Shown here: piece after piece, positions 10,303 through 39,084 of the stretch
How the letters are laid out: every line of letters begins with the position of its first letter
Numbering within the stretch: position 1 is the stretch's first letter
Virus record (IMG/VR): IMGVR_UViG_3300028384_001500
Coordinates: 124,001-188,000 of that record
Reading direction: 5' to 3' (one strand)
DNA length: 64,000 nucleotides
Program-made: the position numbers and the translations under genes
The notes under the pieces: generated by a model
The model's database searches: none
Seen by the model: only the letters and a program-made list of their open reading frames with translations
Told to the model about the DNA's origin: nothing

Positions 10303-11451
10303 CTAGAAAATTGTAATTACTTTACCGTTAGGTATTGGTACGTACTTAAGTTGTTTTTGTATTTGTTCTGCCCTTGTTGCTTGTGTTTCAATAAGCTTGT
10401 CATAAGTCATACTGTCTAGCATTTCTCTTAACTTATCTTTAAGTCCATCTCTATCAGACCTCCCGTTGCTAATCAAATCAGAACTATTTAAAGAAACATC
10501 AGAATTAGGTACAGGAATGCTTCCAAATTTACCCCTAATATAACCTAACTGCTCCATTGAAATAGCTAGCGTGTAACTTCTAATCCACTGGCGACCTATG
10601 CTATTAATGCGGTTATACTTGACATTGCCAAAAGGAAGATTACTCATATTTGATACACCGTGAACTGTATCATCGCGATAAGCAGGTGATGTTGGATCTG
10701 GGTACTGTCTAATTCTTAAGAATAATTTAGATTCTGTTGTAGGAATAGGATAAATTCTAAAATTTGTCCCCATAACTTTGTAAGAAAAATTAGATCTTCG
10801 CACTCTATTTGAAAGGTCTAGTTGCCCACCACGCAAAAGATCTTCGTATACAGGAAGAATATAAAAGACTGTTTCAGGTGTAAAAGACTCAAAGCTAAAC
10901 TCGTTATTAAGGTAATTAATTGCTGATGTTGTGTCAAAAAATCTGTATGCTGCTTGAGGATTATAGTGAAACACTTCTTCAATTTTAATCTTTCCTTTTG
11001 TATTGTCAAAAAGAAGTCCATTAGCCCCACTTAACTCTGTGTAAATATTGTAGTCTTGTCTTCCTACTTCTAGCTGTATCGATCCTGATAAAGAATTATA
11101 AGACCCACCAATTCCAGCTTCCATAGCATAAGGTTCAGCAAAACGACCTAGAAACTCTAGATTTTCTCTAATAAATTTTTCTTCGCCACCAGTCATGCTA
11201 CCTGTAGAAAAACCTAGATAACTAACTAATTGTGACTTAGCTTGATATTGGTTTAATATAGAACTATATTCTAAAGTTGCTTCTTCAAAGTTACCCCATA
11301 TCTGCTTTTTAGTAAGTTCAACTGATAATATATCATCACCTAACTTTCTTTTTACAAAGGTAACAATATTATCAGCTTCGGTAGAAAAATCAGATTCACT
11401 ATCGTATATACCAAAGGGTGTAGGATTAGATGTATTTTCAAAATTTGCCAC
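10303..11451 (-). CDS. Neck / head-tail adaptor protein (gp13-like)
   Basis: RKLG..VELT..Q, WIRSYTLA...LGYIRGKF; GTG start preceded by GAGG. Confidence 0.8.
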   Translation of the reverse strand: MANFENTSNPTPFGIYDSESDFSTEADNIVTFVKRKLGDDILSVELTKKQIWGNFEEATLEYSSILNQYQAKSQLVSYLGFSTGSMTGGEEKFIRENLEFLGRFAEPYAMEAGIGGSYNSLSGSIQLEVGRQDYNIYTELSGANGLLFDNTKGKIKIEEVFHYNPQAAYRFFDTTSAINYLNNEFSFESFTPETVFYILPVYEDLLRGGQLDLSNRVRRSNFSYKVMGTNFRIYPIPTTESKLFLRIRQYPDPTSPAYRDDTVHGVSNMSNLPFGNVKYNRINSIGRQWIRSYTLAISMEQLGYIRGKFGSIPVPNSDVSLNSSDLISNGRSDRDGLKDKLREMLDSMTYDKLIETQATRAEQIQKQLKYVPIPNGKVITIF

Positions 11452-11513: not shown

Positions 11514-11807
11514 TTATTGGTTGTCGTAGGCACCAGCCATGATATCTTGACAGCATTCCATGATAATTCTTTTTGTAATTGGGCACTCACAACATTCAAC
11601 TAAACACATAATTGCTGCACAACAGTCTTCACGTGAAACACAATTTTTTGTTGACTTCGTCATTGAATAGTTGTGACCCATGTCTGGTCTTGAATCTGGA
11701 AATCCCACAGGATTCATCCCGCCATGACCCATATTAGTCATACCCATCATTTTGAATTCTTTTAAAATCATTTTTCTAATATTAGAGCGATTAATATTTT
11801 TTTCCAT
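11514..11807 (-). CDS. Small Cys/Met-rich protein with a leader-like N terminus
   Basis: NRSNIRKMILKE N terminus; 9 Cys in the C-terminal half (CC, CCEC, CC); AAGGA RBS. Confidence 0.7.
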   Translation of the reverse strand: MEKNINRSNIRKMILKEFKMMGMTNMGHGGMNPVGFPDSRPDMGHNYSMTKSTKNCVSREDCCAAIMCLVECCECPITKRIIMECCQDIMAGAYDNQ

Positions 11808-11837: not shown

Positions 11838-12242
11838 CTACTTATTTTTATATTTTCTTTTTGAATGCAACAGATCTTCTTCATGCCCGTCAACACCGTG
11901 TGACTCATGTGCTTCACCTAAATCATCGCTGTCTTTTACTTTCTCTAGTAAAATTGCAGGTATGTCAGTCTCAATTCCAATGCTAGGCCATTTTACATCA
12001 TATATTGCTATATGACCGCTTTCGTCCAGGCTGTGCCAGAGCACCTTTCCTATTTCATTTAAAGCAGAATCCTTCCGCTTAACATGAGTTAGTCATGTAT
12101 GGCCAATAATGTCATCAGCTGACTTGTCTCTTTTGGTTACATGGTCTAATCCGTAAGAGAACCCTTGTTCTTTACTAGCATAAGAAAGCCTATCTAATTC
12201 TTCTTTAATCAAACTTTTTAATTGGTTTTTTGTTAATTTCAT
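11838..12242 (-). CDS. Candidate selenoprotein, 134 aa, UGA at codon 50 (12093..12095) read as Sec
   Basis: ATG at 12242 overlaps the upstream stop (ATGA). Reads MKLTKNQLKSLIKEE...IIGHT-UGA-LTHVKRKDSALNEIGKVLWHSLDESGHIAIYDVKW..., in frame with track ORF 11838..12044. SECIS-like hairpin follows the UGA. Confidence 0.75.
12056..12086 (-). promoter_or_regulatory. Putative bacterial-type SECIS element
   Basis: CAUGUUAAGCGGAA-GGA-UUCUGCUUUAAAUG: 8-bp upper stem, bulged U, lower stem; G-starting apical loop begins 20 nt after the UGA. Confidence 0.7.
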
Positions 12243-12574
12243 TTTTTAGGCCCACCTTCTGTATATCCTGTGCAACTATTTGTTGCTTTACAAGAAAAGC
12301 CAAATGCGTGACAAAAAGCTGATGATTTATTCTTTGCAGTTACACCCGCCTCAATAGCTTCTTTTGATATATCATATGCAGCACAAGTTTTACAATATTT
12401 AACTTTGCCAAATTTATCTTCTAAAAACTCTTTTAAATCTTTGCGTTTTTTAGGATTACCGTATTTAGCATTTTTAATTGCTTTTTGTTTTCCGCCTTTG
12501 ACTTTCTTAAATGCATTGGCTTTTTTAGCAGCTTCTCTAATTAAATATTTTAGCTGCCCTAATGTAATTCTCAT
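12239..12574 (-). CDS. Leader-bearing small protein with a Cys cluster (HiPIP-like spacing)
   Basis: MRITLGQLKYLIRE leader; CKTC...FCHAFGFSCKATNSC. Confidence 0.75.
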   Translation of the reverse strand: MRITLGQLKYLIREAAKKANAFKKVKGGKQKAIKNAKYGNPKKRKDLKEFLEDKFGKVKYCKTCAAYDISKEAIEAGVTAKNKSSAFCHAFGFSCKATNSCTGYTEGGPKK

Positions 12575-23468: not shown

Positions 23469-25418
23469 TTAGATTACATCCATATCCAAGCAAGTAACTG
23501 TTCCGTAGAAGTCGGCGCGAACCATTTTCTTTCCGTAACGAGTCATTACACCTTTTCTTGGTGTAAAGTCTTCTGGTGCGAAGATCGTTGGAGTTACGAT
23601 TAATGGTACGTACGGAGCATAGACGTATCCAGACTCTAAGTAAGAACCACCTTTGTAACCTACAAGGATCTTGTTGCGTGGGAAGTAAGGATCTTTGTAA
23701 ACAGTAAATCTGTTAGAAAGAGAACCAATTGCTTCAGCACCAATGTTAGAGATAGCTGCTTGACCTTGACCATCAATTTTGATAGAAGGCTTGTACAATA
23801 CAGAAGCTTCGAAGATAGTAGCAACTTCAGGCGAAACCACGATAAAGTTAGCAGAACCACGAAGTGTCTTTCTGTGAATTTCGTTTGCTACGTCGATGAT
23901 GGTTTCAACAAGAGTTTCATACCATTCACGAACTGTACCAGTGAAAGCAGGACCTGGGTTAAGTGAAGAAGTTCTAGCGATTTCTGCACCTGTTCTCTTG
24001 TTAAGGAATTTACCTGGAGAACGCGACCAGAAGAAGTTAGCACCTTTTGCTTCAACCAAGAGGTCGTTAAGGATTTCACGATCGATTTCCAATGCAATCT
24101 GCTCAGAAAGAATTTGAGTCAATTCAACTTCAGCATCCATTGAGTGATATGCATTCAAGTCTTGAGCGAGTTCTGGAGACCAGCGAGCTCTTAACTTACG
24201 AGTTGTAGCTGTAACAGCAATTGACTCGATCTTGATATCAATCTCTGGAATTACCGGTTCTGGTACAGAGTTAAAGTTAGACTCAAATGATGGAATAACT
24301 AAAGTAGTACCTTCGCCACTTGAGGTTTGATTTTGAACTGAGTCAGCAACTGGGAATGAAGCTGTTAAGTGCATTGCAGCATTTAAAACGTCAGCGTCAC
24401 CAGAAGCGCTTCCACCATCAGCGTGTTGCATCACCATCAAGATACCAGTGTTAGCAGCAGTAATGTCAGCTAATGGGTCTGGAGTAAATGTAATCGCATC
24501 ACGAGCACCAGACATAGTTCCTAACTGGTTAAGGCGTCGAACATTAAGAATATTAGTTCCGCCTTGGATAGTTGGACCAGGAACTGTGAAACCGTTAGTT
24601 GTAGTTTCAGCTGAGAAAAGAGCAACTTGCTTAACTTGAGTTGCGTCAAATCTTCTTTCAGTTGATGCATCTTCAATAACACGTGAAGCTGAAAGTACCA
24701 AGAAAGAGTACTCGTTGTCACCGTTGTTGATTCTAGTCAACAATTGTGGATCGAATTGTAGTAATTTAGCATCAGCACCGCTAGTTCCTGCTACGCCTGT
24801 AGAGCTAGCAGATTGAGCTGCACCAGTACCAAAAGAACCGATCATAGCAAGAGGATTTTCAGATTCAACCAATTTATAAGTTCCGTGAACTTTTGAGTAA
24901 GCTGTACCCACCAAATCATATTGACCACCAGTTGCATCAGAACCGGTACGAATAGACTTACCTACTGGATTATTATAGATTGAATCACCGCGTGAGTAAG
25001 TAGAAGCAACAGTATCGGTTAAGTTACCAGCTGCATCAACACCAGCATCACCACCAACGTCAGATCCGTAAGTGTAGTCTAAGTAGAAAAGAAGACCAGA
25101 TGGAAGTGACATAGGCTGGATAGATACTAATTCGTTAGCAACTAATCCACCGAATACACGACGTACGATTGGGAAAGCGATGTTAGTGAAACCATCAATG
25201 TTTGATCCACCGTTACCACCACCTAAAGTGTTTGCCTCACGAAGAACTTGTGCAGCTTGGTTTTCCATTAAGCGTGCCATGTTTTCGCGGCCGTGACCCT
25301 CAAGTCCTCTTAAAAGACCTGTGCGAGTCCATTTTTCTTGAATTCTGCTAGCTTCGGCACCTACGTGACGATCGCGAATCCCTTCAGTTAATTGATTTAA
25401 AGTAAATGATCTACTCAT
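23469..25418 (-). CDS. Major capsid protein (T4 gp23-like)
   Basis: VSIQPMSLPSGLLFYL, TRKLRARWSPELAQDLNAYH, EIDREIL, YAPYVPL, FTPRKGVMTRY. Confidence 0.97.
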   Translation of the reverse strand: MSRSFTLNQLTEGIRDRHVGAEASRIQEKWTRTGLLRGLEGHGRENMARLMENQAAQVLREANTLGGGNGGSNIDGFTNIAFPIVRRVFGGLVANELVSIQPMSLPSGLLFYLDYTYGSDVGGDAGVDAAGNLTDTVASTYSRGDSIYNNPVGKSIRTGSDATGGQYDLVGTAYSKVHGTYKLVESENPLAMIGSFGTGAAQSASSTGVAGTSGADAKLLQFDPQLLTRINNGDNEYSFLVLSASRVIEDASTERRFDATQVKQVALFSAETTTNGFTVPGPTIQGGTNILNVRRLNQLGTMSGARDAITFTPDPLADITAANTGILMVMQHADGGSASGDADVLNAAMHLTASFPVADSVQNQTSSGEGTTLVIPSFESNFNSVPEPVIPEIDIKIESIAVTATTRKLRARWSPELAQDLNAYHSMDAEVELTQILSEQIALEIDREILNDLLVEAKGANFFWSRSPGKFLNKRTGAEIARTSSLNPGPAFTGTVREWYETLVETIIDVANEIHRKTLRGSANFIVVSPEVATIFEASVLYKPSIKIDGQGQAAISNIGAEAIGSLSNRFTVYKDPYFPRNKILVGYKGGSYLESGYVYAPYVPLIVTPTIFAPEDFTPRKGVMTRYGKKMVRADFYGTVTCLDMDVI

Positions 25419-28872: not shown

Positions 28873-29475
28873 TTACCACCTCAGAATTTCATTAAACATT
28901 CTATCAATTTTATCTGTCTGGTTAAAAAATTTGTCTAAATCTTTTCTTTGTATCTTGTGTTCTTTAAGCATAAAAGCACCTGGCGTACTAGGTTCAGATA
29001 CCATATCAAAGCAAATTAATTGAAAATCATCTTGAACAACTTGGTTTCCACCTTTTGACACCGTCGAACCAACGCCTCTTGATGATATCCCTAAGGTTAC
29101 ACCACTTTCAATAAGCGACTGAATAATTTTTCCACTAGGTGTGTCTAAAATTTCAATTCTTCCGTATACGTCATCACCTTTCATATAGGCTTCTCTTACA
29201 ATATGGCTAACATTTTTAAGTTCAACTACAGAAGAGTCTGGGTGATCGCATTCACCTAATGCTCTATTTTCTCTAATCATTTTTTGATAATTCATAATTT
29301 CTCTTTCTAAAATAGGCCTAGGGTAAACTCTTCCGTTTTGGTTAAGTGTGTTTGCTCTCTGAATGACGCCTGATAACATTATCTTTCCACCAAACTTTTC
29401 TCTTGATTCTTTAATCATTTCTTTTGAACACTGGATAGGTGTCCATTCTCTTAAAACATTTAAATCATTAGCCAT
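28873..29475 (-). CDS. Prohead protease (gp21-like)
   Basis: NQNGRVYP, ALGECDHP, VSHIV, LGISSRGVGS, FDMVSEPSTPGA. Confidence 0.95.
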   Translation of the reverse strand: MANDLNVLREWTPIQCSKEMIKESREKFGGKIMLSGVIQRANTLNQNGRVYPRPILEREIMNYQKMIRENRALGECDHPDSSVVELKNVSHIVREAYMKGDDVYGRIEILDTPSGKIIQSLIESGVTLGISSRGVGSTVSKGGNQVVQDDFQLICFDMVSEPSTPGAFMLKEHKIQRKDLDKFFNQTDKIDRMFNEILRW

Positions 29476-29476
29476 G

Positions 29477-30319
29477 TTACTTTACCTCTTTTTTAATTTC
29501 TGATATCATTTTTGTAAGTGTTAAAAACTTAACAACATTTTGATCATCAACTTCTTGAGAAGAAAGTGTTTTAATTTTTTGTCTTACTTCGTCAAGTTTG
29601 TTTAGTAAATATTTGTTATCAGTTGTGTCTTCAAATTTTTCCAAAGATCTAAGTGCTTCTATTTTTTTAGTTTCAAAAAATTGCTCTAACTGGTTGTCTT
29701 TTTTATCAGAGAGAAACACATAACCTTCGATAATTCTTTTTTGATCGCTTGATAGGCTTCCTCCATAGTGTTTATTAAACTTTTCTGTCAATATTTTTAA
29801 AACTAAACGATCATTATGGGAAGCATTTATTTTATTTTCCTCATTTAAAGATACTTTTTCTTTTAACATGATCGACCCTAAGCGAGTTTCTAAATCAACA
29901 AGACTTTTAATATCTTTTTCTGACTTTCGCCATTCGTTCAGGGTTAATTGAATCACTCCTAAGTCTCTGTAGTTGTCAACATTTCTATAATAAAAATCTT
30001 TGTCTTTGATTTGGTAATTGATATCTTTTAGTAACATTGACTTTTGACGATCTAAAGTCTTTTCATTTAGCTGTTTGCTAGCAATCTTCGCCTCATTTAA
30101 AATGGAAGCAACAGTATGTGTATTTGTAATGTTAGATTGTGCCAGTGCATTAAAAAGTCTAAACTCTTTATAAAGGTCTGTCCCTTTTTTAAAATGCTTT
30201 TCAATAAGTTTTGTGGCAACTTTAGCTTCTTTCTTATTACCTTCAATTAATTTTGTAGCTACATGCTTAAGCAAAAGCTCGTAAACAATACCTACATTTC
30301 TTTTTTTATTATGTTTCAT
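29477..30319 (-). CDS. Hypothetical protein between portal and protease
   Basis: MKHNKKRNVGIVYELL; helical; head operon. Confidence 0.75.
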   Translation of the reverse strand: MKHNKKRNVGIVYELLLKHVATKLIEGNKKEAKVATKLIEKHFKKGTDLYKEFRLFNALAQSNITNTHTVASILNEAKIASKQLNEKTLDRQKSMLLKDINYQIKDKDFYYRNVDNYRDLGVIQLTLNEWRKSEKDIKSLVDLETRLGSIMLKEKVSLNEENKINASHNDRLVLKILTEKFNKHYGGSLSSDQKRIIEGYVFLSDKKDNQLEQFFETKKIEALRSLEKFEDTTDNKYLLNKLDEVRQKIKTLSSQEVDDQNVVKFLTLTKMISEIKKEVK

Positions 30320-32264
30320 CGTCTTCTTCTCCTGATGAATTATTCTCAGAAATTATTATAGAATTCGTTTTTCTACTACCATAAGTATTATCAAAACGCT
30401 GTAAAGTTGATTTTAATGTATCATTAATTTTTGCGTTAACAGAAATTTGCTCGTCAAGATATTTATCTAAATTAAAATCATCATCAGACTCAAGCAAGTC
30501 TTTTGCTGAAGGTGCTTTTATGGATTTTTTAAGATCATAATTTAATTTACTCATTCCTGCATCAATTTCTTGATCTCTTTTTCTAGTCTTTCCAAACTTT
30601 TTTACACTACTTCCGCCTGTATTTAGACTACTTCCTTTGTTAATAACTAAGTCTTCATCAAATTTATTTTCTTCGTCCTCTTCTAATCCATCAACGTTTA
30701 GTTCAATTAGTTTTTGAATTTTAACAGGAAGTTCGTCATCTTCAATTGACTGTTGCTCTGAGAGTGCGCCTAGGTCAATACCCCCTCCGCCTAGTTCAAC
30801 ATTACCTCCGTCAAATTGAGGTAGCCCGGCTGCTGGATTTTCTGGCCCATCAGGAGTAGTTAGTTGTGTTGCTTCAATTGAAAGATCACTTATTTTATCG
30901 TCTCTAAGACCTGATTGAACTGCTTCAATTTCTTCATCAGAAAGTCTTAAAATATTTTTTTGAACCCATCTTCTATCCACTAACCCTGCAGTTTGTAGTG
31001 CTGATGCTGCTGTTGTAAATCTTCCGTTGTAAAGCTCTAATTTTTGCTGCTGCGCGATTGTTGATGGGTTTGACAACATTAATTTAAAGTCTAATAAATC
31101 TTCATCACTAAAGCCATTACAATAAAGATGAACAATTGCTATCTTGTTCATTTCTGATAATACAGTTCTTTGAATTCTTGCAATTGTACGACTAAATCTA
31201 ATATCTTCTTGGGAGAGTGTTGCCTTAGCACCTAGACCTTCATCATAACCTAGATACGCCTTAGGTATTTTAAGTGCAGCAAACAATTTCTTTTGAATAT
31301 ATTCTACATCTTGTGTTTCTCCGGCGATAGTATCTCCGCCAAGAGGTTCAATTTTTGTACCACTATCTCCACCACGTACAGGAATAAAATAATCTTCATC
31401 AATTGAAAGTGGATTATATCTTAAATCCACTCGTCCAGTTTGCTTATCTACAATTGACGTGCGTTTTAACGAAGATTGTGCTTGTTCCATGTAGTTTGCA
31501 ACTTCTTCTGGCGGGACATTTCCAACATCAATGTAAAATATTCTACGACCTGGTGCTCTAACAATTCTGTGTACTAACATTGCGTCTTCTAATAAGATCA
31601 TTTGGCGCCAAATCCTTCTAGCAGGTTCTAGAACTGATGACCCGTACGGTAAAAATGCATCATTTCCTAAAAGTCTCATATGAGAAACTTGCCAATTTTC
31701 TAATACTTGATTACCTTGTGTCACCCATCTAAAACGAACTGCCATTGGATCATTAGGGTCAAAGCCCTCTTCTCTTTCTACTTCAGATATAGGCAATGGA
31801 AAACAGTTAATCACACCGTGTTTAGGGTGCACATCGTTAAATAAAAAACAATCACCATATTTAACTAAATTCCTAACCCAAGATGACATGTTAAATTCTA
31901 CATTAAGTGTATCATAAAACAATTCTGTAAGGATCTGTTGTATTTTAGAATTATCAGAGTAAATATGTAAAGTCTTACCTGCTTCGTCAGCTGACACTGA
32001 TTCTTCTGAATAAATGTCTAAAGCGCTAGCTATTTCAGGTGTATATTCCATTTCAGAAAAATCTGAATACCTTGCCATTCTGTCATAAGTTCCGTATGCA
32101 GACATTGCGTTGCTATAAACCGTTGACTGATTTTTCTTAAATTGATCAAACGCTGATGATGTGTAGTTTTTATCTGTGTTTTTAAGCACGTTTCTTCTTA
32201 CAACAGGCCCACTTCTAAATAATCGTGTCAGTCTTTGAAAGAGATTTCTATCATTTTTTGCCAT
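30309..32264 (-). CDS. Portal protein (gp20-like)
   Basis: LLEDAMLVHRIVRAPGRRIFYIDVGNVP, EDYFIPVRG, DVEYIQKKLFAALKIP. Confidence 0.97.
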   Translation of the reverse strand: MAKNDRNLFQRLTRLFRSGPVVRRNVLKNTDKNYTSSAFDQFKKNQSTVYSNAMSAYGTYDRMARYSDFSEMEYTPEIASALDIYSEESVSADEAGKTLHIYSDNSKIQQILTELFYDTLNVEFNMSSWVRNLVKYGDCFLFNDVHPKHGVINCFPLPISEVEREEGFDPNDPMAVRFRWVTQGNQVLENWQVSHMRLLGNDAFLPYGSSVLEPARRIWRQMILLEDAMLVHRIVRAPGRRIFYIDVGNVPPEEVANYMEQAQSSLKRTSIVDKQTGRVDLRYNPLSIDEDYFIPVRGGDSGTKIEPLGGDTIAGETQDVEYIQKKLFAALKIPKAYLGYDEGLGAKATLSQEDIRFSRTIARIQRTVLSEMNKIAIVHLYCNGFSDEDLLDFKLMLSNPSTIAQQQKLELYNGRFTTAASALQTAGLVDRRWVQKNILRLSDEEIEAVQSGLRDDKISDLSIEATQLTTPDGPENPAAGLPQFDGGNVELGGGGIDLGALSEQQSIEDDELPVKIQKLIELNVDGLEEDEENKFDEDLVINKGSSLNTGGSSVKKFGKTRKRDQEIDAGMSKLNYDLKKSIKAPSAKDLLESDDDFNLDKYLDEQISVNAKINDTLKSTLQRFDNTYGSRKTNSIIISENNSSGEEDDET

Positions 32265-32273
32265 TTATACTTC

Positions 32274-33899
32274 CTAAAATAACCATTTATGTTCTTTAAT
32301 ATTTATTCTGTTTTTTGCTGAATTTACAAATGGGTTGCTTTTTGGCCCAGATGATCTATTTTGTTCAGCGTTTGATCCTTTACTAAATATTGTTACCGGA
32401 GATGAAACGCCTTCTGGAGAGTCTTCGTAAGGTGTTGTGTTTCTAGACATAGCCTTAAGCATTGCATCGTTAATTGCCTTTGAATTCTTGCTATAATCAG
32501 CAGATGCATCAAATAGCCAAGTTCCAATTGCAAGACTCATAACTAGGTCATCATTGTAACCTCTTCTAGCAGAAGCTCTTCCGTTGTTACCTACTGCAAA
32601 CACCTTTAACTCCTCATAGAACCTACTAGAGTATACAGCGAGTTGCTTGTTTCTTAAAACTTCTTCAAGTTTAGTTAGTATTGTTCCTCTTGTTTTGCCG
32701 TTTGTGTTAAAACCTGCGACGTCAGGTGTTTGTTTCGGAACATACTCACCAATATAAACACCTTTTCTTCGTTTATAATAGAGCCTAGGATATTTAAGCT
32801 CTTGAAGTTTAAGTATTGTTGCGTATCCGTAACTATTGTTTTCAGGGCAAACCAAAGCCTTATTGTACTTTAGGCCGTATGTATTAATAAGCTCAGCAAA
32901 TTTATCTGGTCGTATCTTACCTTTATACTCAGCTATGACCTCTGAGTTATTAACATCAATAATGTGAAATGTTGAAAAATCTTTTGCGTCGCCTCTAGCT
33001 ACATCTGCAGATATTACGTATTCGTTCTCTGACAAAGGCTGTTTCCAGATCCATACGTTATTATCTGGGCCTTCTCTCATTTTAGGAGGGGTTACAATAC
33101 CCCCTAACCATTCAATGGTCACACTGTCCAAATACGTTTCACCAGAGACAGCAAAGTCGCATAGGTATTCTTGTGCAATTTGCCTTTTAGAAAGGTTAGC
33201 TGTTACTTGTTTAAACCACTCTTCACCACGTTCAGGGTGTTCATCCCACATAATCTTAATAGGATTGAATTCATTTAGGCCGGCTTCTGCTTCTGTATAT
33301 AATTTATGATACTGACCGCCTACGCCATTTGGAGTTGATAGGATAATTACTCGACCACCAGTAGAAATTGTGGGGTAAATACCTGTCCAGATAGTATCAA
33401 AGTTTCTTACAAAGGCAGCTTCATCAACTATAAGGAGTGATAGTGCTTCAGAGCGACCGGCGTCTTCCGAGGTTGGTATTGCCTTAATTTGAGAGCCATG
33501 TGAGAATATAATCTCTTGCTTATTGTTTGAAACAATTTCGGGCAATAACATCCACTTAGGAAGTGACTTAATCATTGTCTTTACTTTGATAATAAAGTTT
33601 TGTGCAACTTTTAGTTTTGTTGCAATAATAAGAATATTTTTTTCTTTTTTAAATATCGCCATCCAAACTGAATAAGCAGCAACAAGTGTAGAAAGACCCA
33701 ACTGCCTTGATTTAAGCACAATATTAAATCTATGTTCATTAAAATCTTCTGTGCATGCCTCTTGAAAAGGAAACATCTCAAAAGGAATAAGACCTTTAAC
33801 AGGATGCTGAATTTTTACATAGTTCTTAAAAAAATAGTTAGGATCTTTTCCGCACTTAATAATTTCTGATACTTGCGCTTTTTTAGTTAGTTTGGCCAT
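32274..33899 (-). CDS. terL: Terminase large subunit
   Basis: KSRQLGLST (Walker A), LLIVDEAAF (Walker B), STPNG, nuclease ADVARG and DDLVMS. Confidence 0.97.
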   Translation of the reverse strand: MAKLTKKAQVSEIIKCGKDPNYFFKNYVKIQHPVKGLIPFEMFPFQEACTEDFNEHRFNIVLKSRQLGLSTLVAAYSVWMAIFKKEKNILIIATKLKVAQNFIIKVKTMIKSLPKWMLLPEIVSNNKQEIIFSHGSQIKAIPTSEDAGRSEALSLLIVDEAAFVRNFDTIWTGIYPTISTGGRVIILSTPNGVGGQYHKLYTEAEAGLNEFNPIKIMWDEHPERGEEWFKQVTANLSKRQIAQEYLCDFAVSGETYLDSVTIEWLGGIVTPPKMREGPDNNVWIWKQPLSENEYVISADVARGDAKDFSTFHIIDVNNSEVIAEYKGKIRPDKFAELINTYGLKYNKALVCPENNSYGYATILKLQELKYPRLYYKRRKGVYIGEYVPKQTPDVAGFNTNGKTRGTILTKLEEVLRNKQLAVYSSRFYEELKVFAVGNNGRASARRGYNDDLVMSLAIGTWLFDASADYSKNSKAINDAMLKAMSRNTTPYEDSPEGVSSPVTIFSKGSNAEQNRSSGPKSNPFVNSAKNRINIKEHKWLF

Positions 33900-34354: not shown

Positions 34355-34609
34355 TTAATTTTTATAAAGTTTACGCTTTATAGATATATAACTTCTAACA
34401 TCAGTTTTATTAGGACGCCAGCCATTTTTCCATTCATTTCTTCTAGACTCAGCAAAGTTAAGATAACAATCATTACAACAATTGTATTCTCTATTTTTTT
34501 CAAAATCTTCAGAAGAAGCCAATGGGAACTGACAAACCGGACAATAAAAATTTTCTTTTTTAAAATTGCCAATTACTTTAATTTTAGGGCTGGTAGACAT
34601 ACGAATCAA
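34355..34609 (-). CDS. Small zinc-finger protein
   Basis: CPVC...CCNDC, WKNGWRP. Confidence 0.7.
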   Translation of the reverse strand: MIRMSTSPKIKVIGNFKKENFYCPVCQFPLASSEDFEKNREYNCCNDCYLNFAESRRNEWKNGWRPNKTDVRSYISIKRKLYKN

Positions 34610-37600
34610 CTCCTTTTCTCATGATATCGATGTTATTGTCAACGACGTCTTTAATCTCATCAATGTGAGATATTACTACAATATTTTTAAACCACTTTTT
34701 AAGGGTATGTAATAACTTACCACAAGCTTCTAAGTTTGTTTCATCTAGCGCACCAAAACCTTCATCAATCATCAGCATGTTTGTCTTGGGAAGAGAAGAT
34801 ACGTTAATTAAGGCTACTCTAATTGCAAGGGATGCCATCATTTTTTCCATACCAGATCCAAGCTCTATAATTCTCTTACTATCTCCGTAGTTAATAAATA
34901 TATCCATTGTGTTGCTATCTAGGTCAGCTTCTAGATCTACTGTAAACCCAACAACCCCTTTTAAAATTTTAGATATCTCTGTGTTAATCTGGGGTAGCAT
35001 GGCGTGTATAATTTGCACAGGTATACCTTTGTTTGATGTTGCCTGTATAAAAAGATCATATACTCTTAAAGCTTTGCTAATCTTTTCATATTCTTTCTTT
35101 TGTTTGACTAGCACATTTTTTTCTGCTTTTTCTTTTGCCAATTTTGTAATCATTCCTGTTCTTTTGGCGTCTGATTCTCTAATTAGACTATTTGTTTGGC
35201 TAATTCTTTTTTCTGCAAGAATATGTGCATTATCTGTTTCTTGACTATCATAGCGTTCTTTTAAGTCTTTGTATTCTTTTTCAAATGTCAAAATATTAGG
35301 CTTAAGATTGTCGATGTCTTTTTCATAACCTTTAATTTTTATCTTAATCGATGATATTGACGTGACTAGTTCAGACTTTTTCTGCAATATTGCATTGTAT
35401 TTGTCCAATTCTTCACTGTAATCTTTTCTTCCTAATTTTCTAAAAGCAGCCTTAAGATCGTCTACTTTTACTTTAAGCGCCGTTACTTTGTCTCGCTGTT
35501 TTTCTAGTTTTCTTTTATTTGAGTGAGACTCTTTTATAAACTTGCATTTAGGAAACTGATCACCACAAGGCACTTCTTTCAACTTTTCCACAGACTTTTC
35601 AATAAATGATAGTTCTTTTCTTTCGTATTTTAAATCGCTTTGCATTGAAGAAAGCAAAGACTCAATTTGTTTTTGGGCATCTCTTTTTTCTCTTATCTCA
35701 TCTGGGTTAATGTTACTTAAAAACAGATCTACTTTAGATATTTTTTGGTCTGTTTCAAATATTTCATCTTTTAAGTTATCCCGCTTAGTTATTAAATTTT
35801 CCAAAGACTTAGTTGCCACGTTCCATTTCTGCTCGGCAATTGATACTTGTGCGCCGGTTATGTAATCAGGTTTGACATTTGAATGTAAATCCTTTACATA
35901 GGCTTCATAGTCTTCTCTTAACTTTTCTAGCTTTTCTTCTTCTTTCTTAATAGACGTCTTTATTTCACTAATAGAGTACTCCTTTAGACCTATTTGTTTA
36001 TCCCAGTCACCTTTATTTAAGGTTTGTGCCTGCTGTTTAAGTGAAGCTGCTTCTTTTTTTGCATACTCATTCATTCCGTCAAAAACAGTTAAATCTAAAA
36101 AGTTTGCTAAAATAGCTTTTCTTGCACTGGCTTTTTCTTTAATAAAATTGTTCATATCACCCTGTGAGGCTAATGAAGTCATCAAAAACTCTTCAGGCCC
36201 ACCAATCATACCTCTAATAATCTTTTCTGTTTCTCTGCGTTGCTCTTCAGTAAGATCTTCTATGATATCACCCGACTTATCAAGTTTGTAAAACTTAAGT
36301 GTTGTAGGTGCCCAAACATTTTTCTTTGTCTGTTTCTTGACTGTTTGCCTAATAATTCGATACGGTACGTTATTAATTGATATATCTAATTCTGCCTTGC
36401 AAGAATTTTTTCTTGTATTAATCAAATGGATATTTTTAATTGAGCCTCGATCTGAGGTGTTAAATAGAGTGTATGCAATAGTACCAATAATAGATGACTT
36501 ACCTCTAGCATTTCTGCCAAAGATACCTGTGATGCCGGGCAAGTTTTCAAAATTAATAAAATTTCCGTCTTTGTAAGAAAAGCAATTATCAAACTTAAGA
36601 CTATTAATCGACCACCTGACATTTCTTAAATCCCTATCAGATTGTGCTATTTCTGAAAGACTTCTATCGACTAAGTCGTCTAGTTTTGTTAGATCATTAT
36701 CTGACAAATTGTTACTTTTATAATACTCTCTAATCAATTCCTTATGCTTATCAGGGCTTCGCAAGTCAATTGACATTGTTTTACCTGAGCTTGTTTGAAT
36801 TGTATCTGATTCAAACTTTGATTCAACTTTAAAAACAACCTCAGAAGCAGCCTTTTGCTTTGTTAGTATTTTTTGAAGCCTTCTTGCATCAGCTTGACTA
36901 ATGTAGTTATCAGCACGAATTCTAAATCTTGAAAGATTAGGATACTCTTTGCATTTATTGTACGTCTTTTGTACGTCACCTTGCCAATCAACTGTTACAA
37001 AATGATATCTGTTTTCAACAGGGTAGAACTGACATGTAAAATTGTCAGCATCTTTAATATCCCATAGTAAAAACCCTTTTTCGTTATCTTCACCAAAGTT
37101 TTGCTGAATTGTAGATCCGCAGTAGGCAATGGTTTCTTTTTTATTTAAGAACTGTCGTTTGTGAATGTCACCTAGCATTGCAAAGTCATATGATTTAAAG
37201 AGATCTAATGTAGACTCGCCTTCTAGTTGCCAGTCTACATCAGTAAGACTACCTCTTACAGCACCGTGATACAATGCAATGCTGACATTGTCTTTTGACG
37301 GTTTTGCCTTAAAGAAGTTTTCTTCATCAAAGCAAGATAACACACACCATTCAAACCCTGGAGCAAACTCATAAGTACCCGACTTTTTGTACAGGCGTAT
37401 CCTAGGGTTGTCTAATGCTTCAATAATAGGTGTAATAGCATCTTGCCTATCTCTATTTAGTATAAGGCCGTCATGGTTTCCGAGAATGACATGTGTTGGT
37501 GCTATTTTAGCCAGGCCATTAAACCACCAACACAAGTTTTGTATTAACTCTGGGGATATTCCTTGGGTCTTAGAATGTACAATATCACCACCTACATAGA

Positions 37601-37715
37601 TAATATCAGGCTGCAGCTCTTCAGCTTGCCTAAATAGGTCTTTAAATGCTAAAACGTATTCTTGATGGCGAGAAAGTCCTCGCCAGTGGATATCAGCTAT
37701 GTGTAGTATTTTCAT
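34584..37715 (-). CDS. Fused SbcD/Mre11 nuclease + SbcC/Rad50 ATPase (gp47-gp46-like)
   Basis: ADIH, GGDIVH, GNHD, GDIH phosphoesterase motifs; GRNARGKSS Walker A, coiled coil with CGDQFPKC, GSGME signature, IDEGFGALD, ISH. Confidence 0.92.
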   Translation of the reverse strand: MKILHIADIHWRGLSRHQEYVLAFKDLFRQAEELQPDIIYVGGDIVHSKTQGISPELIQNLCWWFNGLAKIAPTHVILGNHDGLILNRDRQDAITPIIEALDNPRIRLYKKSGTYEFAPGFEWCVLSCFDEENFFKAKPSKDNVSIALYHGAVRGSLTDVDWQLEGESTLDLFKSYDFAMLGDIHKRQFLNKKETIAYCGSTIQQNFGEDNEKGFLLWDIKDADNFTCQFYPVENRYHFVTVDWQGDVQKTYNKCKEYPNLSRFRIRADNYISQADARRLQKILTKQKAASEVVFKVESKFESDTIQTSSGKTMSIDLRSPDKHKELIREYYKSNNLSDNDLTKLDDLVDRSLSEIAQSDRDLRNVRWSINSLKFDNCFSYKDGNFINFENLPGITGIFGRNARGKSSIIGTIAYTLFNTSDRGSIKNIHLINTRKNSCKAELDISINNVPYRIIRQTVKKQTKKNVWAPTTLKFYKLDKSGDIIEDLTEEQRRETEKIIRGMIGGPEEFLMTSLASQGDMNNFIKEKASARKAILANFLDLTVFDGMNEYAKKEAASLKQQAQTLNKGDWDKQIGLKEYSISEIKTSIKKEEEKLEKLREDYEAYVKDLHSNVKPDYITGAQVSIAEQKWNVATKSLENLITKRDNLKDEIFETDQKISKVDLFLSNINPDEIREKRDAQKQIESLLSSMQSDLKYERKELSFIEKSVEKLKEVPCGDQFPKCKFIKESHSNKRKLEKQRDKVTALKVKVDDLKAAFRKLGRKDYSEELDKYNAILQKKSELVTSISSIKIKIKGYEKDIDNLKPNILTFEKEYKDLKERYDSQETDNAHILAEKRISQTNSLIRESDAKRTGMITKLAKEKAEKNVLVKQKKEYEKISKALRVYDLFIQATSNKGIPVQIIHAMLPQINTEISKILKGVVGFTVDLEADLDSNTMDIFINYGDSKRIIELGSGMEKMMASLAIRVALINVSSLPKTNMLMIDEGFGALDETNLEACGKLLHTLKKWFKNIVVISHIDEIKDVVDNNIDIMRKGVDSYVYQP

Positions 37716-37725
37716 ATTGGAGTCC

Positions 37726-39084
37726 TTATTCTTTCATTACCACTTTGGTATCTTTTTTGTCAATTTGGAATTGTGGTTCGCACCCTGGTATTATAACCCA
37801 GCATCTTTTAGATTTACAAGGTTTTGGTTTAGGTGCATAGCCATCAGTCATAATAATATAGCCATCATATTTAGCAATATGCTTTCTAAAGTGATCCTCG
37901 ACACAGTTAAAACAAGTACCTCCGCCCCTAGTTCTATATGCTTTTCGAACTGTTTTATTCTTTTTCCAGACAAACTCACTCTCTTCATCGACTGCTGTAT
38001 CGAAGTGATAGATGGTAAACGTTACCCGTTTTGCCAATTCATTAAGTGTATTGAATAGTAATTGCAATTCATGATCGCCAACGGATCCGGATTGGTCAAT
38101 ATAGACTGCAATGTTAGATGTGTAACTTGTTTTTCGACCTGGATGAATGTATGGGTATTTCTTATTAATACGCTTATAAGTTCTAGAGCGATTAGCTTTT
38201 TGCTTAGAACCACAGAAATATCTCAATACATTTCGCCAGTCGATTTCATCGGAAAACATTGCTTGGATTTCCCCTTGCATGCTAGCTCCAACTGAACCCC
38301 ATGAACGATTTTTGTTTGCTCGATTTGCAGCTTTTTTAACAATCTCTTTAATTTTAGCATCGGCCATGGCTTTTTCAGCATCAGTAAGCTCTTCATCAAA
38401 GTGATGATCAAAACCTTGACCGGGCTGACCGTTACCAAATCCGTGTTCGCAAGAGCCATTCCCTCCACCACCAGAACCTTCGTCATCACCAGAACCATCT
38501 TCAGAACCATCACCAGAACCACACATTGGACAGCTACCTGTGCCTTTTTGCCCCATAGACTCCTGAATGGCATCTTGAATATCTTCATCAGACATGATTT
38601 TTTCCATGTACCATTCAGATGCCTTATTTAAAGGTAGCGATTTGATAAAGTCACTCATTTGGATTTGTTCTGGCGTTGGGGTATAATCTTTAGGAAATAC
38701 TGTTGCTTGGCCAGGAACTAATCCGCCGTCAGGTAATTCATCAAGCGGTATTGTTGAGTTAATTGCCAAATCAGTTGCAATATTCCACATGAGGTGTGGC
38801 TTTTGCTTTCTACCTGTAACATGTTTATAAATCAAATGATAACATTCGTGCTTAAGTAATCCAAACACTTTTTTTGTTGTTAGCTTGCCAACAAAGTCTG
38901 GGTTCCAATGCAGAGTAAATTCTCCTCCGGAACATGAAACACCAGCTGTTGGTATGGCATAGGTTTTTTGTCGACGAATATGACTCATTATATCTGAAAA
39001 GAAAGGCTCATTTAATAAGAATTTAAGCATAATCTTTTTAAATCTTTCATCAGTTAATTCTTCTTTTGTTAAGGCATCTACCAT
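37726..39084 (-). CDS. Metallopeptidase-like + vWA domain protein (DUF2201-type)
   Basis: KHECYH, WNIATDLAIN, IDQSGSV (MIDAS), GGGT, MTDG. Confidence 0.85.
   Translation of the reverse strand: MVDALTKEELTDERFKKIMLKFLLNEPFFSDIMSHIRRQKTYAIPTAGVSCSGGEFTLHWNPDFVGKLTTKKVFGLLKHECYHLIYKHVTGRKQKPHLMWNIATDLAINSTIPLDELPDGGLVPGQATVFPKDYTPTPEQIQMSDFIKSLPLNKASEWYMEKIMSDEDIQDAIQESMGQKGTGSCPMCGSGDGSEDGSGDDEGSGGGGNGSCEHGFGNGQPGQGFDHHFDEELTDAEKAMADAKIKEIVKKAANRANKNRSWGSVGASMQGEIQAMFSDEIDWRNVLRYFCGSKQKANRSRTYKRINKKYPYIHPGRKTSYTSNIAVYIDQSGSVGDHELQLLFNTLNELAKRVTFTIYHFDTAVDEESEFVWKKNKTVRKAYRTRGGGTCFNCVEDHFRKHIAKYDGYIIMTDGYAPKPKPCKSKRCWVIIPGCEPQFQIDKKDTKVVMKE

What the first reader, a model, noticed from the sequence alone, without database searches (positions are those of the whole stretch)
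11838..12242. Candidate phage-encoded selenoprotein: in-frame UGA plus bacterial SECIS hairpin in a probable virion cargo protein
Seen: the ORF track leaves 12045..12238 empty. An ATG at 12242, coupled by ATGA overlap to the upstream gene, opens MKLTKNQLKSLIKEE..., the same leader as its neighbours. It reads 49 codons to a single TGA (12093..12095, context GHT-U-LTHV), then continues in frame for 84 more codons through the track's 68-aa ORF. Just 3' of the UGA is a hairpin (12056..12086) with stem AAGCGGAA/UUCUGCUU, a bulged U and a GGA apical loop starting 20 nt after the codon. TGA is an ordinary stop elsewhere in the window (12239, 12571, 19383), so this is site-specific recoding and not a global code change. 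Established: bacterial Sec insertion uses a SelB-bound stem-loop directly 3' of the UGA, with a G at the start of a small apical loop roughly 16-37 nt away. Inference: the phage borrows the host SelA/B/C/D machinery to make a Sec protein that is probably packaged in the head. From memory and unverified, the sequence resembles marine T4-like phage proteins with H-x-C-A-T-H-V...YDV.F..G.E, which would put Cys at the UGA position. To my knowledge phage selenoproteins are rarely if ever described.
Basis: partly seen in the sequence, partly recalled or inferred. Interest (0 to 1): 0.95.

Follow-up and report, generated by a model that had tools for sequence, protein, structure and literature searches.

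The report
Phage-encoded selenoprotein with SECIS hairpin
A marine T4-like phage gene carries one conserved in-frame UGA followed by a co-varying hairpin, at a position where cyanophage relatives have cysteine, which makes it a strong computational candidate for a bacteriophage-encoded selenoprotein family, something I found no report of in the searchable literature.

Summary
A minus-strand ORF (ATG 12242) meets a single TGA at 12095..12093 and continues in frame to TAG 11838. A hairpin lies at 12080..12062, with an 8-bp stem and a GGA loop that starts 20 nt after the UGA.

Evidence for selenocysteine:
- **TGA is conserved.** It is invariant at this codon in all 71 IMG/VR relatives (51 distinct sequences) and in 8 of 8 database proteins checked. 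Flanking codons vary freely at synonymous positions.
- **"W" is an artefact.** The Trp shown in public protein databases comes from code-4 gene calls.
- **Cys homologs exist.** They share the H-x-[U/C]-x-x-H motif in T4-like cyanophages and other marine phages, and one BLASTP alignment crosses the site (48% identity, E 6e-23).
- **Every TGA subfamily has a hairpin.** The sequences differ, but each sits 18-23 nt after the UGA with a loop starting (A)G[G/U], and compensatory changes are present. Six Cys-form genes lack it.
- **TGA is otherwise a stop.** Five other window genes end in TGA, and no other in-frame TGA in the window has such a hairpin.

No cellular genome encodes the family. The host, its sel genes and the protein's function are unknown. 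The domain is a small His-rich beta-barrel behind a leader shared by about ten ORFs of the head module.

The parts
11838..12242 (-). Whole recoded gene: ATG 12242, 49 codons, UGA, 84 codons, TAG 11840..11838. The predicted product is 134 residues with Sec at position 50.
   Evidence: The frame is conserved on both sides of the TGA in all relatives. Codons flanking the TGA vary only synonymously.
12195..12242 (-). N-terminal leader MKLTKNQLKSLIKEEL. It is shared with about ten ORFs of the head module and is a probable capsid-targeting, protease-cleaved propeptide (inference).
   Evidence: One search lists the ORFs with the same leader. One search finds a Peptidase_S77 (T4 gp21) prohead protease at 28873..29475. 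The leader is modelled as a helix in the AF2 model of a Cys homolog.
12096..12242 (-). N-piece, 49 codons, ending in the conserved I-I-G-H-T. The His at -2 from the UGA is invariant across the family.
12093..12095 (-). In-frame UGA, the predicted selenocysteine codon.
   Evidence: TGA in 71/71 IMG/VR loci, 45/45 in the first set, and 8/8 'W' database representatives. Cys (TGT/TGC) sits at the aligned position in homologs.
12062..12080 (-). SECIS-like apical hairpin: stem 12080..12073 / 12069..12062, loop GGA 12072..12070, 20 nt after the UGA.
   Evidence: fold; 33 sequences, 95.5% of cells paired, 3 of 8 pairs with double changes, 0/500 shuffles reach the observed score. It meets the bacterial SECIS model quoted in PMC13188914.
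11841..12092 (-). C-piece, 84 codons: the rest of the conserved small beta-barrel domain (LTHV..VLWHSL..G.I..YDV.W..IP..LE..H.H) and a basic tail.
   Evidence: (141 profile hits). No Pfam family.

Best explanation
The gene encodes one polypeptide of about 134 residues. The UGA at 12095..12093 is decoded as selenocysteine by the bacterial host's Sec machinery (SelB with Sec-tRNASec, made by SelA and SelD). The hairpin at 12080..12062 acts as a bacterial-type SECIS that tethers SelB about 20 nt downstream of the codon.

Shown by computation:
- The UGA is conserved.
- Coding selection continues across the UGA.
- There is a Sec/Cys pair inside a conserved H-x-[U/C]-x-x-H motif.
- A co-varying hairpin with a G-initiated small loop sits at a fixed distance from the UGA in every UGA-bearing subfamily, and is absent from Cys forms.

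Inferred:
- The Sec residue lies in the first strand of a small His-rich beta-barrel, next to invariant or near-invariant His and Asp residues. It probably serves as a metal ligand or redox centre.
- The protein carries a cleavable N-terminal leader that targets it into the T4-like prohead.
- The host must therefore be a Sec-decoding marine bacterium.
For: 1. The TGA is invariant in 71/71 IMG/VR relatives, 51 of them distinct. These span three or more subfamilies down to about 30-40% identity.
2. All 8 database 'W' representatives checked are TGA.
3. In 28 distinct group-1 sequences, the six codons on each side vary at third positions (GGN, CAY, ACN | CTN, ACN, CAY, GTY). The site is never TAA, TAG or TGG.
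4. Cys homologs were found: 9-10 of the HMM representatives, 242 + 34 cyanophage records by tblastn, and specific sequences in P-HM2, ACG-2014d and AG-345 viruses.
5. A BLASTP alignment of a Sec form against a Cys form runs straight across the site: IIGHT[U]LTHV vs VLGHSCATHV, 48% identity, E 6e-23.
6. Hairpin classes are GGA/GGG/GUC loops at 20 nt in group 1 and AGUU/AGUC at 18 nt in group 2, plus GGUCU or GAC (group 3), GUU, an AGUG/CGUGA alternative, and GUC at 18-23 nt elsewhere.
7. Covariation: 95.5% and 95.0% of cells paired, compensatory changes in 3/8 and 2/7 pairs, 0/500 shuffles, and a collapse when partners are slid. These changes cost amino-acid changes (KRKDSA to RKKGSS).
8. In group 2 the hairpin sits on non-homologous codons but at the same distance from the UGA.
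9. The bacterial SECIS criteria of PMC13188914 are met by 49/51 family members, against 2.8% of background TGAs.
10. Six Cys-form genes have no hairpin at 18-23 nt.
11. TGA is a normal stop elsewhere in the window, and no tRNA is present in the window.
13. In the AF2 model of a Cys form the site lies inside beta-strand 1 of the domain (residues 26-36, pLDDT above 90), so termination there would cut the fold.
Against: - There is no experimental evidence of selenium insertion.
- The host is unknown, so the presence of selA/B/C/D cannot be checked.
- The closest cultured relatives by capsid and neck proteins infect Flavobacterium, Microcystis and Rhodothermus. As far as I know the Sec trait is not common in those groups.
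- Pelagibacter, the commonest marine host, lacks selC.
- The apical hairpin alone is modest (-6.8 kcal/mol, A/U-rich) and has a 3-nt loop, the lower bound of the model. It passes the -7.5 kcal/mol criterion only when the whole 58-nt region is folded (-13.5).
- The lower stem is not conserved.
- Only 64 kb of a 236.7-kb phage genome was visible, so a phage-borne suppressor tRNA elsewhere cannot be strictly excluded.
- Rfam gives no hit, but Rfam represents bacterial SECIS elements poorly, so this carries little weight.
Confidence: 0.8

Rival explanations
1. Programmed stop-codon read-through. The UGA is decoded at some frequency by a standard near-cognate tRNA (Trp or Cys). The downstream hairpin acts as a read-through stimulator or ribosome pause, so the cell makes a 49-residue product and a full-length product without selenium.
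For: Translation must pass the UGA. The nucleotide after the UGA is C in 32 of 33 group-1 sequences, and from memory UGA-C is a weak termination context in E. coli. The hairpin is short. The host Sec machinery is unproven.
Against: The homologous residue is Cys, never Trp, and no TGG was seen at the site. Seven or so unrelated hairpin sequences all keep a G followed by G or U at the start of a small loop, 18-23 nt from the UGA. That is the SelB-type signature, not a generic stable structure. In group 2 the base after the UGA is mostly A, so no common read-through context exists.
Confidence: 0.1
2. True termination. Two separate products are made, the 49-residue leader peptide and a separately initiated C-terminal protein, and the hairpin has a regulatory or coupling role.
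For: Standard gene callers produce exactly this: many 63-77-residue database entries. In group 2 an ATG often follows the TGA directly.
Against: No start codon is conserved after the TGA. Group 1 has CTN/GCG there, group 2 also has CTG, GTG and ATA, and the GTG of the 68-aa ORF is GTT/GTA/GTC in relatives. The conserved H-x-[U/C]-x-x-H motif and beta-strand 1 straddle the codon. Cys homologs are contiguous polypeptides. Only TGA is ever used at the site, never TAA or TAG.
Confidence: 0.04
3. Genome-wide or late-gene stop-codon reassignment (TGA = Trp, code 4), or a phage suppressor tRNA, as in recoded gut phages.
For: Gene callers chose code 4 for many short contigs of this family. Stop-codon recoding in phage late genes is documented (10.1101/2021.08.26.457843, PMC9523058).
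Against: TGA terminates five other real genes of the window, several with ATGA overlaps. Only one of 45 candidate in-frame TGAs shows the signal. There is one TGA per gene, at one conserved site aligned to Cys rather than Trp. No tRNA is present in the window.
Confidence: 0.04
4. Sequencing or assembly error, or a unique nonsense allele (pseudogene).
For: None beyond the fact that the window is a single metagenomic assembly.
Against: The same TGA occurs in independent assemblies from JGI, ENA/Tara and Logan samples and across deep divergence.
Confidence: 0.01

Closest known systems
Bacterial selenoprotein genes with an intragenic SECIS (E. coli fdhF type; marine selenoproteomes of Zhang and Gladyshev, PMC1088965, PMC2398784; model in PMC13188914)
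   Same: There is an in-frame UGA and a stem-loop directly 3' of it inside the coding region. The loop is small, with G then G or U in its first positions, 16-37 nt from the UGA. Cys-containing homologs exist and the flanks are conserved.
   Different: The gene is carried by a lytic-type T4-like phage. It has no relative in 185,579 bacterial and archaeal species genomes. The protein domain is unannotated (no Pfam family). The E. coli-type bulged U is absent.
Selenoproteins of eukaryotic viruses (poxvirus glutathione-peroxidase homologs; review PMC8310308, which notes that a few viruses redefine UGA as Sec)
   Same: A virus relies on the host's Sec-insertion machinery to make its own selenoprotein.
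   Different: The poxvirus cases are captured host enzymes that use a eukaryotic 3'-UTR SECIS (from memory). Here the element is bacterial-type and intragenic, and the family is phage-specific.
Cyanophage T4-like gene cluster annotated 'possible cytitidyltransferase' or hypothetical (P-HM2 PHM2_164, P-SSM7, Syn9 gp185, ACG-2014d gp154)
   Same: It is the same domain, matched by sequence and by fold (BFVD E 7e-7 to 2e-5). The motif H-x-C-A-x-x-V ... H-[ST]-L-x-E-x-G ... YD[VIM] ... H-E-H is shared, and the genes lie near head genes.
   Different: These carry Cys (TGT/TGC), not UGA, and lack the hairpin. The domain is embedded in 439-597-residue proteins. Their hosts are marine picocyanobacteria, which as far as I know do not decode Sec. 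The transferase name seems to derive from a neighbouring or fused true nucleotidyltransferase.
Stop-codon-recoded phages (TAG to Gln, TGA to Trp; 10.1101/2021.08.26.457843, PMC9523058)
   Same: An in-frame stop codon sits in a late or structural gene, and standard gene callers break or mistranslate the gene.
   Different: Those phages reassign a codon genome-wide with suppressor tRNAs. This is one site per genome region, with a cis RNA signal, and TGA is kept as a stop elsewhere.
T4 internal head proteins and other gp21-processed core proteins
   Same: It is a small basic protein encoded in a T4-like head module (terminase, gp20, gp21, gp23, gp13). It has a short N-terminal leader shared by a set of neighbouring genes and ending in (L/I)-x-E, the cleavage motif I recall for the T4 prohead protease.
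   Different: There is no sequence homology to T4 internal proteins. Packaging and cleavage are untested.

Membership tests
Bacterial-type selenoprotein gene (Sec-UGA plus bSECIS) | The in-frame UGA is conserved among orthologs, with coding conservation on both sides. | tested here: met
   71/71 loci have TGA. Synonymous variation flanks an invariant TGA.
Bacterial-type selenoprotein gene (Sec-UGA plus bSECIS) | Cys-containing homologs have Cys aligned to the UGA. | tested here: met
   and 94 (alignment across the site, E 6e-23).
Bacterial-type selenoprotein gene (Sec-UGA plus bSECIS) | bSECIS geometry: apical loop of 3-9 nt, upper stem of 4-16 bp (PMC13188914). | tested here: met
   The window has a 3-nt loop and an 8-bp stem. 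Family stems are 5-8 bp and nearly all loops are 3-5 nt.
Bacterial-type selenoprotein gene (Sec-UGA plus bSECIS) | A G in the first two loop positions, usually followed by G or U. | tested here: met
   Loops are GGA, GGG, GUC, AGUU, AGUC, GGUCU, GUU and AGUG/CGUGA. One group-3 locus has GAC, where G is first but is followed by A.
Bacterial-type selenoprotein gene (Sec-UGA plus bSECIS) | Spacing of 16-37 nt between the UGA and the apical loop. | tested here: met
   20 nt in the window. The family has 18 or 20 nt in 48 of 51 loci, with the others at 19-23 nt and one scan outlier at 33 nt.
Bacterial-type selenoprotein gene (Sec-UGA plus bSECIS) | MFE of -7.5 kcal/mol or lower. | tested here: inconclusive
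   The 58-nt region after the UGA folds at -13.5 kcal/mol (window), and 50/51 family members reach -7.5 or lower. The apical hairpin alone is only -6.8. The paper does not say here which span is folded.
Bacterial-type selenoprotein gene (Sec-UGA plus bSECIS) | The structure is supported by covariation, and it is absent from Cys forms. | tested here: met
   (0/500 shuffles; 22 and 10 doubly changed cells); six Cys genes have no hairpin at 18-23 nt.
Bacterial-type selenoprotein gene (Sec-UGA plus bSECIS) | The translating cell has SelA, SelB, tRNA-Sec and SelD. | not testable with these tools
   The host is unknown. No tRNA is in the window. Only 64 of 236.7 kb of the phage was seen.
Bacterial-type selenoprotein gene (Sec-UGA plus bSECIS) | Selenium is incorporated at the UGA position. 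| not testable with these tools
   This needs 75Se labelling or mass spectrometry.
Stop-codon reassignment (code 4) phage | TGA is not used as a terminator, and many genes carry in-frame TGA. | tested here: not met
   Five other real genes of the window end in TGA. Only one qualifying in-frame TGA exists.
T4-type prohead core / internal protein | The gene is encoded in the head morphogenesis module of a phage that has a gp21-family protease. | tested here: met
   Peptidase_S77 at 28873..29475, portal at 30309..32264, Gp23 at 23469..25418, terminase at 32274..33899, and a gp13-like gene downstream. In L050 the homolog lies two genes after Peptidase_S77.
T4-type prohead core / internal protein | A shared N-terminal targeting or cleavage leader. 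| tested here: met
   About ten window ORFs start M(K/R)(I/L)T..QL+.LI.E or a close variant. That the motif is a cleavage site is my inference.
T4-type prohead core / internal protein | The processed protein is present in virions. | not testable with these tools
   This needs virion proteomics.

The most novel reading that the evidence does not exclude
Marine T4-like phages package a selenocysteine-containing, His-rich small-barrel protein inside their heads. This would make production of fully equipped virions depend on the host's Sec machinery and on selenium supply. The inefficient UGA/SECIS step would set, or sense, the ratio of truncated leader peptide to full-length protein. Presence of the Sec form versus the Cys form would then mark whether a phage's host decodes Sec. 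Some of these large phages might also carry their own tRNA-Sec.
Probability: 0.3. Interest if true: 0.92.

Novelty: new variant of a known kind. Interest (0 to 1): 0.88.

Why it matters
The Sec insertion mechanism itself is known. I found no report of a bacteriophage gene that uses it. Six searches of the held paper library that bear on this returned none. A 2026 review of prokaryotic selenoproteomes never mentions phages or viruses. The nearest statement is that some huge phages carry predicted tRNA-Sec genes (PMC10747093).

If confirmed, this would matter in several ways:
- It would add viruses of bacteria to the selenoproteome.
- It would define a new selenoprotein domain, H-x-U-x-x-H on a small beta-barrel, with natural Cys counterparts ready for biochemistry.
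- It would give a sequence marker that restricts the possible hosts of many uncultured marine phages to Sec-decoding bacteria.
- It would link phage reproduction to a trace element.
- It exposes a systematic annotation error: public databases hold this family either truncated or with a false Trp.

Tried and rejected
- **DNA search of cultured phages.** A distant-mode DNA search of the 2.5-kb region against 50,697 phage records found no match.
- **tblastn of the C-piece against cultured phages.** It gave only weak cyanophage hits. Group-2 and 'MEWKSS' subfamily queries found no cultured phage with a Sec form, so no host could be read off an isolate.
- **RNA scans.** Rfam and tRNA scans of the window were empty.
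- **Protein family scans.** PHROGs and Pfam gave nothing for the gene or its immediate neighbours.
- **Locus search with the broad alignment.** A3 was too diverse to be used.
- **Cellular genomes.** Two genome-contig scans found no cellular relative.
- **Structure search.** Foldseek against PDB gave only insignificant SH3/Tudor/KOW-like matches.
- **Giant proteins in the HMM hit list.** P0056, P0097 and similar hits lack the core motif. I treat them as probable compositional matches, without having examined their composition.
- **Extended lower SECIS helix.** It is not supported.
- **Second selenoprotein gene.** A search in the window and in the flanks of related loci found none.
- **Sec/Cys tree.** The 74-column tree is poorly resolved. 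It shows only that the labels cluster (1-2 switches) and that Sec forms span deep divergence.
- **Constraint observed.** The two pieces were searched apart, and full-length forms used were database entries as returned by the search tools.
Full report
**What is in the window**

On the minus strand an ATG at 12242 overlaps the TGA stop of the upstream gene (ATGA). It opens a frame that reads 49 codons to TGA at 12095..12093 and then 84 more codons to TAG at 11840..11838. The ORF lister therefore shows only a 49-aa ORF and a 68-aa GTG-started ORF.

Downstream of the TGA, an RNA fold gives an 8-bp hairpin, AAGCGGAA-GGA-UUCUGCUU, at 12080..12062. The 71-nt fold has -18 kcal/mol and z = -2.4. There is no bulged U, and the loop starts 20 nt after the UGA.

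The window is part of IMG/VR contig IMGVR_UViG_3300028384_001500, 236,652 bp, and has 34.8% G+C. It carries a T4-like head module:
- terminase at 32274..33899
- gp20 portal at 30309..32264
- gp21-type prohead protease at 28873..29475
- gp23 capsid protein at 23469..25418
- a gp13-like neck gene at 10303..11451 just downstream of the finding

Its capsid and neck proteins are closest, at 30-50% identity, to Flavobacterium phage immuto, Microcystis phage Mel-JY01, Rhodothermus phage RM378 and uncultured huge phages.

**The TGA is conserved, and the database Trp is an artefact**

Only the pieces were searched. The 84-residue C-piece found 44 database proteins with two length classes: about 133-137 residues, and about 63-77 residues. 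The DNA under these proteins has TGA, however. The look-ups report that the gene does not translate to the query under the standard code, and the codon is TGA in every case: P0005, P0042 and P0017, then the divergent P0167, P0135, P0121, P0084 and P0132. The W is a code-4 gene call on short contigs. The short class is the standard-code call that starts after the TGA.

In IMG/VR, 45 of 45 loci and then 71 of 71 loci, 51 distinct at the DNA level, carry TGA at the aligned codon. His is invariant two residues before it.

In 28 distinct group-1 sequences the flanking codons vary freely at synonymous positions: four Gly codons, CAY, three Thr codons, then CTN, four Thr codons, CAY, GTY. The site itself is TGA 28 times and never TAA, TAG or TGG. 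This shows two things. Translation continues across the codon, and the codon has to be UGA specifically.

No start codon is conserved after it.

**Cys homologs**

A profile of the C-pieces was searched against 1.84 billion representative proteins and gave 141 hits. Among hits that extend upstream of the domain, 38 show W, which is TGA wherever it was checked. Nine or ten show Cys in the motif H-x-C-A-T-H-V.

tblastn with two Cys forms found 242 and 34 phage records, almost all T4-like Synechococcus or Prochlorococcus myoviruses. The hits include:
- P-HM2 PHM2_164 and ACG-2014d gp154
- two single-virus genomes

All have TGT or TGC at the site. A Sec form (P0055) and a Cys form (P0129) align at 48% identity, E 6e-23, straight across the site: IIGHT[U]LTHV against VLGHSCATHV. 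This is the Sec/Cys pair on which SECIS-independent selenoprotein prediction rests.

A tree of the domain with the site masked is poorly resolved. Sec and Cys labels cluster with 1-2 switches, and Sec forms span long branches. The UGA has therefore been kept for a long time.

**The hairpin**

Every UGA-bearing subfamily has a hairpin at the same distance from the UGA, but with different sequences:
- Group 1: AAGCGGAA-GGA-UUCUGCUU and variants such as GGAAGAA-GGG-UUCUUCC, AAGAGGAA-GGG-UUCCUCUU and AAGCUGAA-GUC-UUCAGCUU. The loop is 20 nt after the UGA.
- Group 2: AAAGCUG-AGUU-CAGCUUU and GUCUG-AGUU-CAGAC. The loop is 18 nt after the UGA.
- Others: ACUUGGG-GGUCU-CCUAAGU, AGUGGAA-GUU-UUCCGCU, GUACAC-CGUGA-GUGUAC and AGCGUCG-GUC-CGACGCU, with the loop 18-23 nt after the UGA.

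On 33 group-1 sequences, 95.5% of cells pair. Three of 8 pairs show changes on both sides (22 cells). No shuffle out of 500 reaches the observed covariation, and sliding the partners drops pairing to 41-63%. On 20 group-2 sequences the figures are 95.0% paired, 2 of 7 pairs and 10 cells, again 0 of 500.

The compensatory changes cost amino-acid replacements (KRKDSA to RKKGSS). In group 2 the hairpin lies on codons that are not homologous to those of group 1, yet it sits at the same distance from the UGA. The RNA structure and its register to the UGA are what is being selected.

The published bacterial SECIS model requires a loop of 3-9 nt, a stem of 4-16 bp, G in the first two loop positions usually followed by G or U, a spacing of 16-37 nt, and an MFE of -7.5 kcal/mol or lower (PMC13188914). 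The window element fits on geometry. It fits on energy only when the region is folded (-13.5 kcal/mol). The apical hairpin alone has -6.8 kcal/mol.

Three controls were run:
- 49 of 51 family members pass a combined test, against 2.8% of the 2553 TGAs of the window.
- Only this TGA, among 45 in-frame candidates in the window, has such a hairpin.
- Six Cys-form genes have no hairpin at 18-23 nt.

**Alternatives**

- *Global reassignment or a suppressor tRNA.* This is contradicted by five other real genes of the window that end in TGA, by the single site, and by the Cys (not Trp) homologs.
- *Two separate products.* This is contradicted by the lack of a conserved start, by the motif and the first beta-strand straddling the codon, and by the exclusive use of TGA.
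- *Sequencing error.* This is excluded by independent assemblies.
- *Selenium-independent read-through stimulated by the hairpin.* This is the only serious rival. It does not explain the G-initiated small loop kept across unrelated hairpin sequences, or the absence of TGG forms.

I put Sec insertion at about 0.8.

**What the protein may be**

The family has no Pfam model and no relative in 185,579 cellular species genomes. It looks phage-specific.

An AlphaFold model of a natural Cys form (P0182, 61-sequence alignment) is confident for residues 30-88 (pLDDT above 90). It shows an N-terminal helix, which is the leader, followed by a five-stranded small barrel. The site lies in strand 1. PDB matches are insignificant SH3/Tudor/KOW-like folds. 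BFVD matches are only the cyanophage homologs.

Invariant or nearly invariant residues are:
- His at -2
- the Sec/Cys itself
- often His at +3
- the His of WHSL
- the Asp of YDV
- an H-x-H pair at the end of the domain

I infer a metal-binding or redox site with Sec or Cys as a ligand. This is not shown.

The leader M(K/R)(I/L)T..QL+.LI.E recurs on about ten ORFs between the protease gene and the neck genes. In another phage the homolog lies two genes after the protease. In cyanophages it lies beside head genes. Packaging into the head as a protease-processed internal protein is therefore a reasonable inference, still untested.

**Host**

The host is unknown. Literature in the library says Pelagibacter lacks selC, while Actinomarina has the full Sec machinery (bioRxiv 10.64898/2026.04.03.716425). 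It also says the Sec trait is enriched in marine communities (PMC5029168). All cultured phages with the domain carry the Cys form and infect picocyanobacteria.

**Novelty**

Searches of the held library found no described phage selenoprotein gene. A 2026 review of prokaryotic selenoproteomes does not mention phages or viruses. The 2005 and 2008 marine selenoproteome papers do not discuss phages or viral genes either. One paper notes predicted tRNA-Sec genes in huge phages and only speculates about Sec proteins.

The mechanism is the known bacterial one. The carrier (a phage), the protein family and the likely virion location are new. I rate it a new variant of a known kind, of high interest, pending experimental proof.

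Noticed in passing
window 12242, 12574, 13863, 16484, 18697, 19386, 23044, 28275, 28872, 42845 (minus-strand starts): About ten ORFs, nearly all between the prohead protease gene and the neck genes, begin with a similar leader (M-K/R-I/L-T-..-Q-L-+-.-L-I-.-E). This suggests a large set of protease-processed head-internal proteins in this 237-kb phage.
   Followed up: partly
window 11514..11807 (-) and 12239..12574 (-): The two genes flanking the selenoprotein candidate are small and Cys-rich. The 97-aa one ends in a CC..C..CC.C..CC cluster, and the 111-aa one has C..C and several single Cys. Neither has a family match. Together with the Sec/His-rich protein they hint at a redox or metal-related set.
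   Followed up: no
database proteins P0001-P0022, P0045-P0172; loci L044-L053, L129, L130: Public protein collections hold this family in two wrong forms. One is full length with a false Trp, from genetic-code-4 gene calls on short contigs. The other is N-terminally truncated and starts after the TGA. One code-4 call (L050) also runs past the true TGA stop.
   Followed up: yes
L054:3446-4762, L055:3845-5635 (cyanophages P-HM2, ACG-2014d): The cyanophage Cys homologs are annotated 'possible cytitidyltransferase' or 'cytidyltransferase' but show no transferase domain. The name seems to be carried over from the adjacent or fused true nucleotidyltransferase (PHM2_163, ACG-2014d gp153, with the ..GH motif).
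   Followed up: partly
window 34584..37715 (-): A single 1043-aa ORF combines a calcineurin-like phosphoesterase (Mre11/gp47-like) N-terminus with an SbcC/Rad50 (gp46-like) ATPase. In T4 these are two separate genes (from memory).
   Followed up: no
window 23469..25418 (-): The gp23-family major capsid protein is 649 aa. Pfam Gp23's best-scoring stretch covers only residues 387-640, and tblastn to relatives aligns in two pieces covering about 57%. This suggests a large N-terminal extension or inserted domain.
   Followed up: no
window 37726..39084 (-): This ORF has DUF2201 putative metallopeptidase and VWA-like domains and sits next to the nuclease/ATPase gene.
   Followed up: no
A2 alignment; L022-L043 vs L001-L020: In the 'MKEGK' subfamily the hairpin is encoded by codons 4-10 after the UGA, inside a 5-residue insertion relative to the window's group. 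The RNA element kept its distance to the UGA while the protein alignment shifted.
   Followed up: yes
L004, L008-L011, L013, L018, L026, L042; P0047, P0048, P0061: The region upstream of the H-x-U motif is highly variable in length (about 18 to 195 residues) and sometimes carries extra domains. Some C-termini add a K-rich stretch plus an LYPY..G(Y/I)..(G/D)GGE tail. The conserved unit is only the roughly 65-residue barrel that spans the UGA.
   Followed up: partly
P0056, P0078, P0090, P0097, P0119, P0154, P0158, P0163: Very long proteins (up to 5112 aa) hit the C-piece profile in many stretches but lack the core motif. They are probably compositional matches to the acidic/basic tail.
   Followed up: partly
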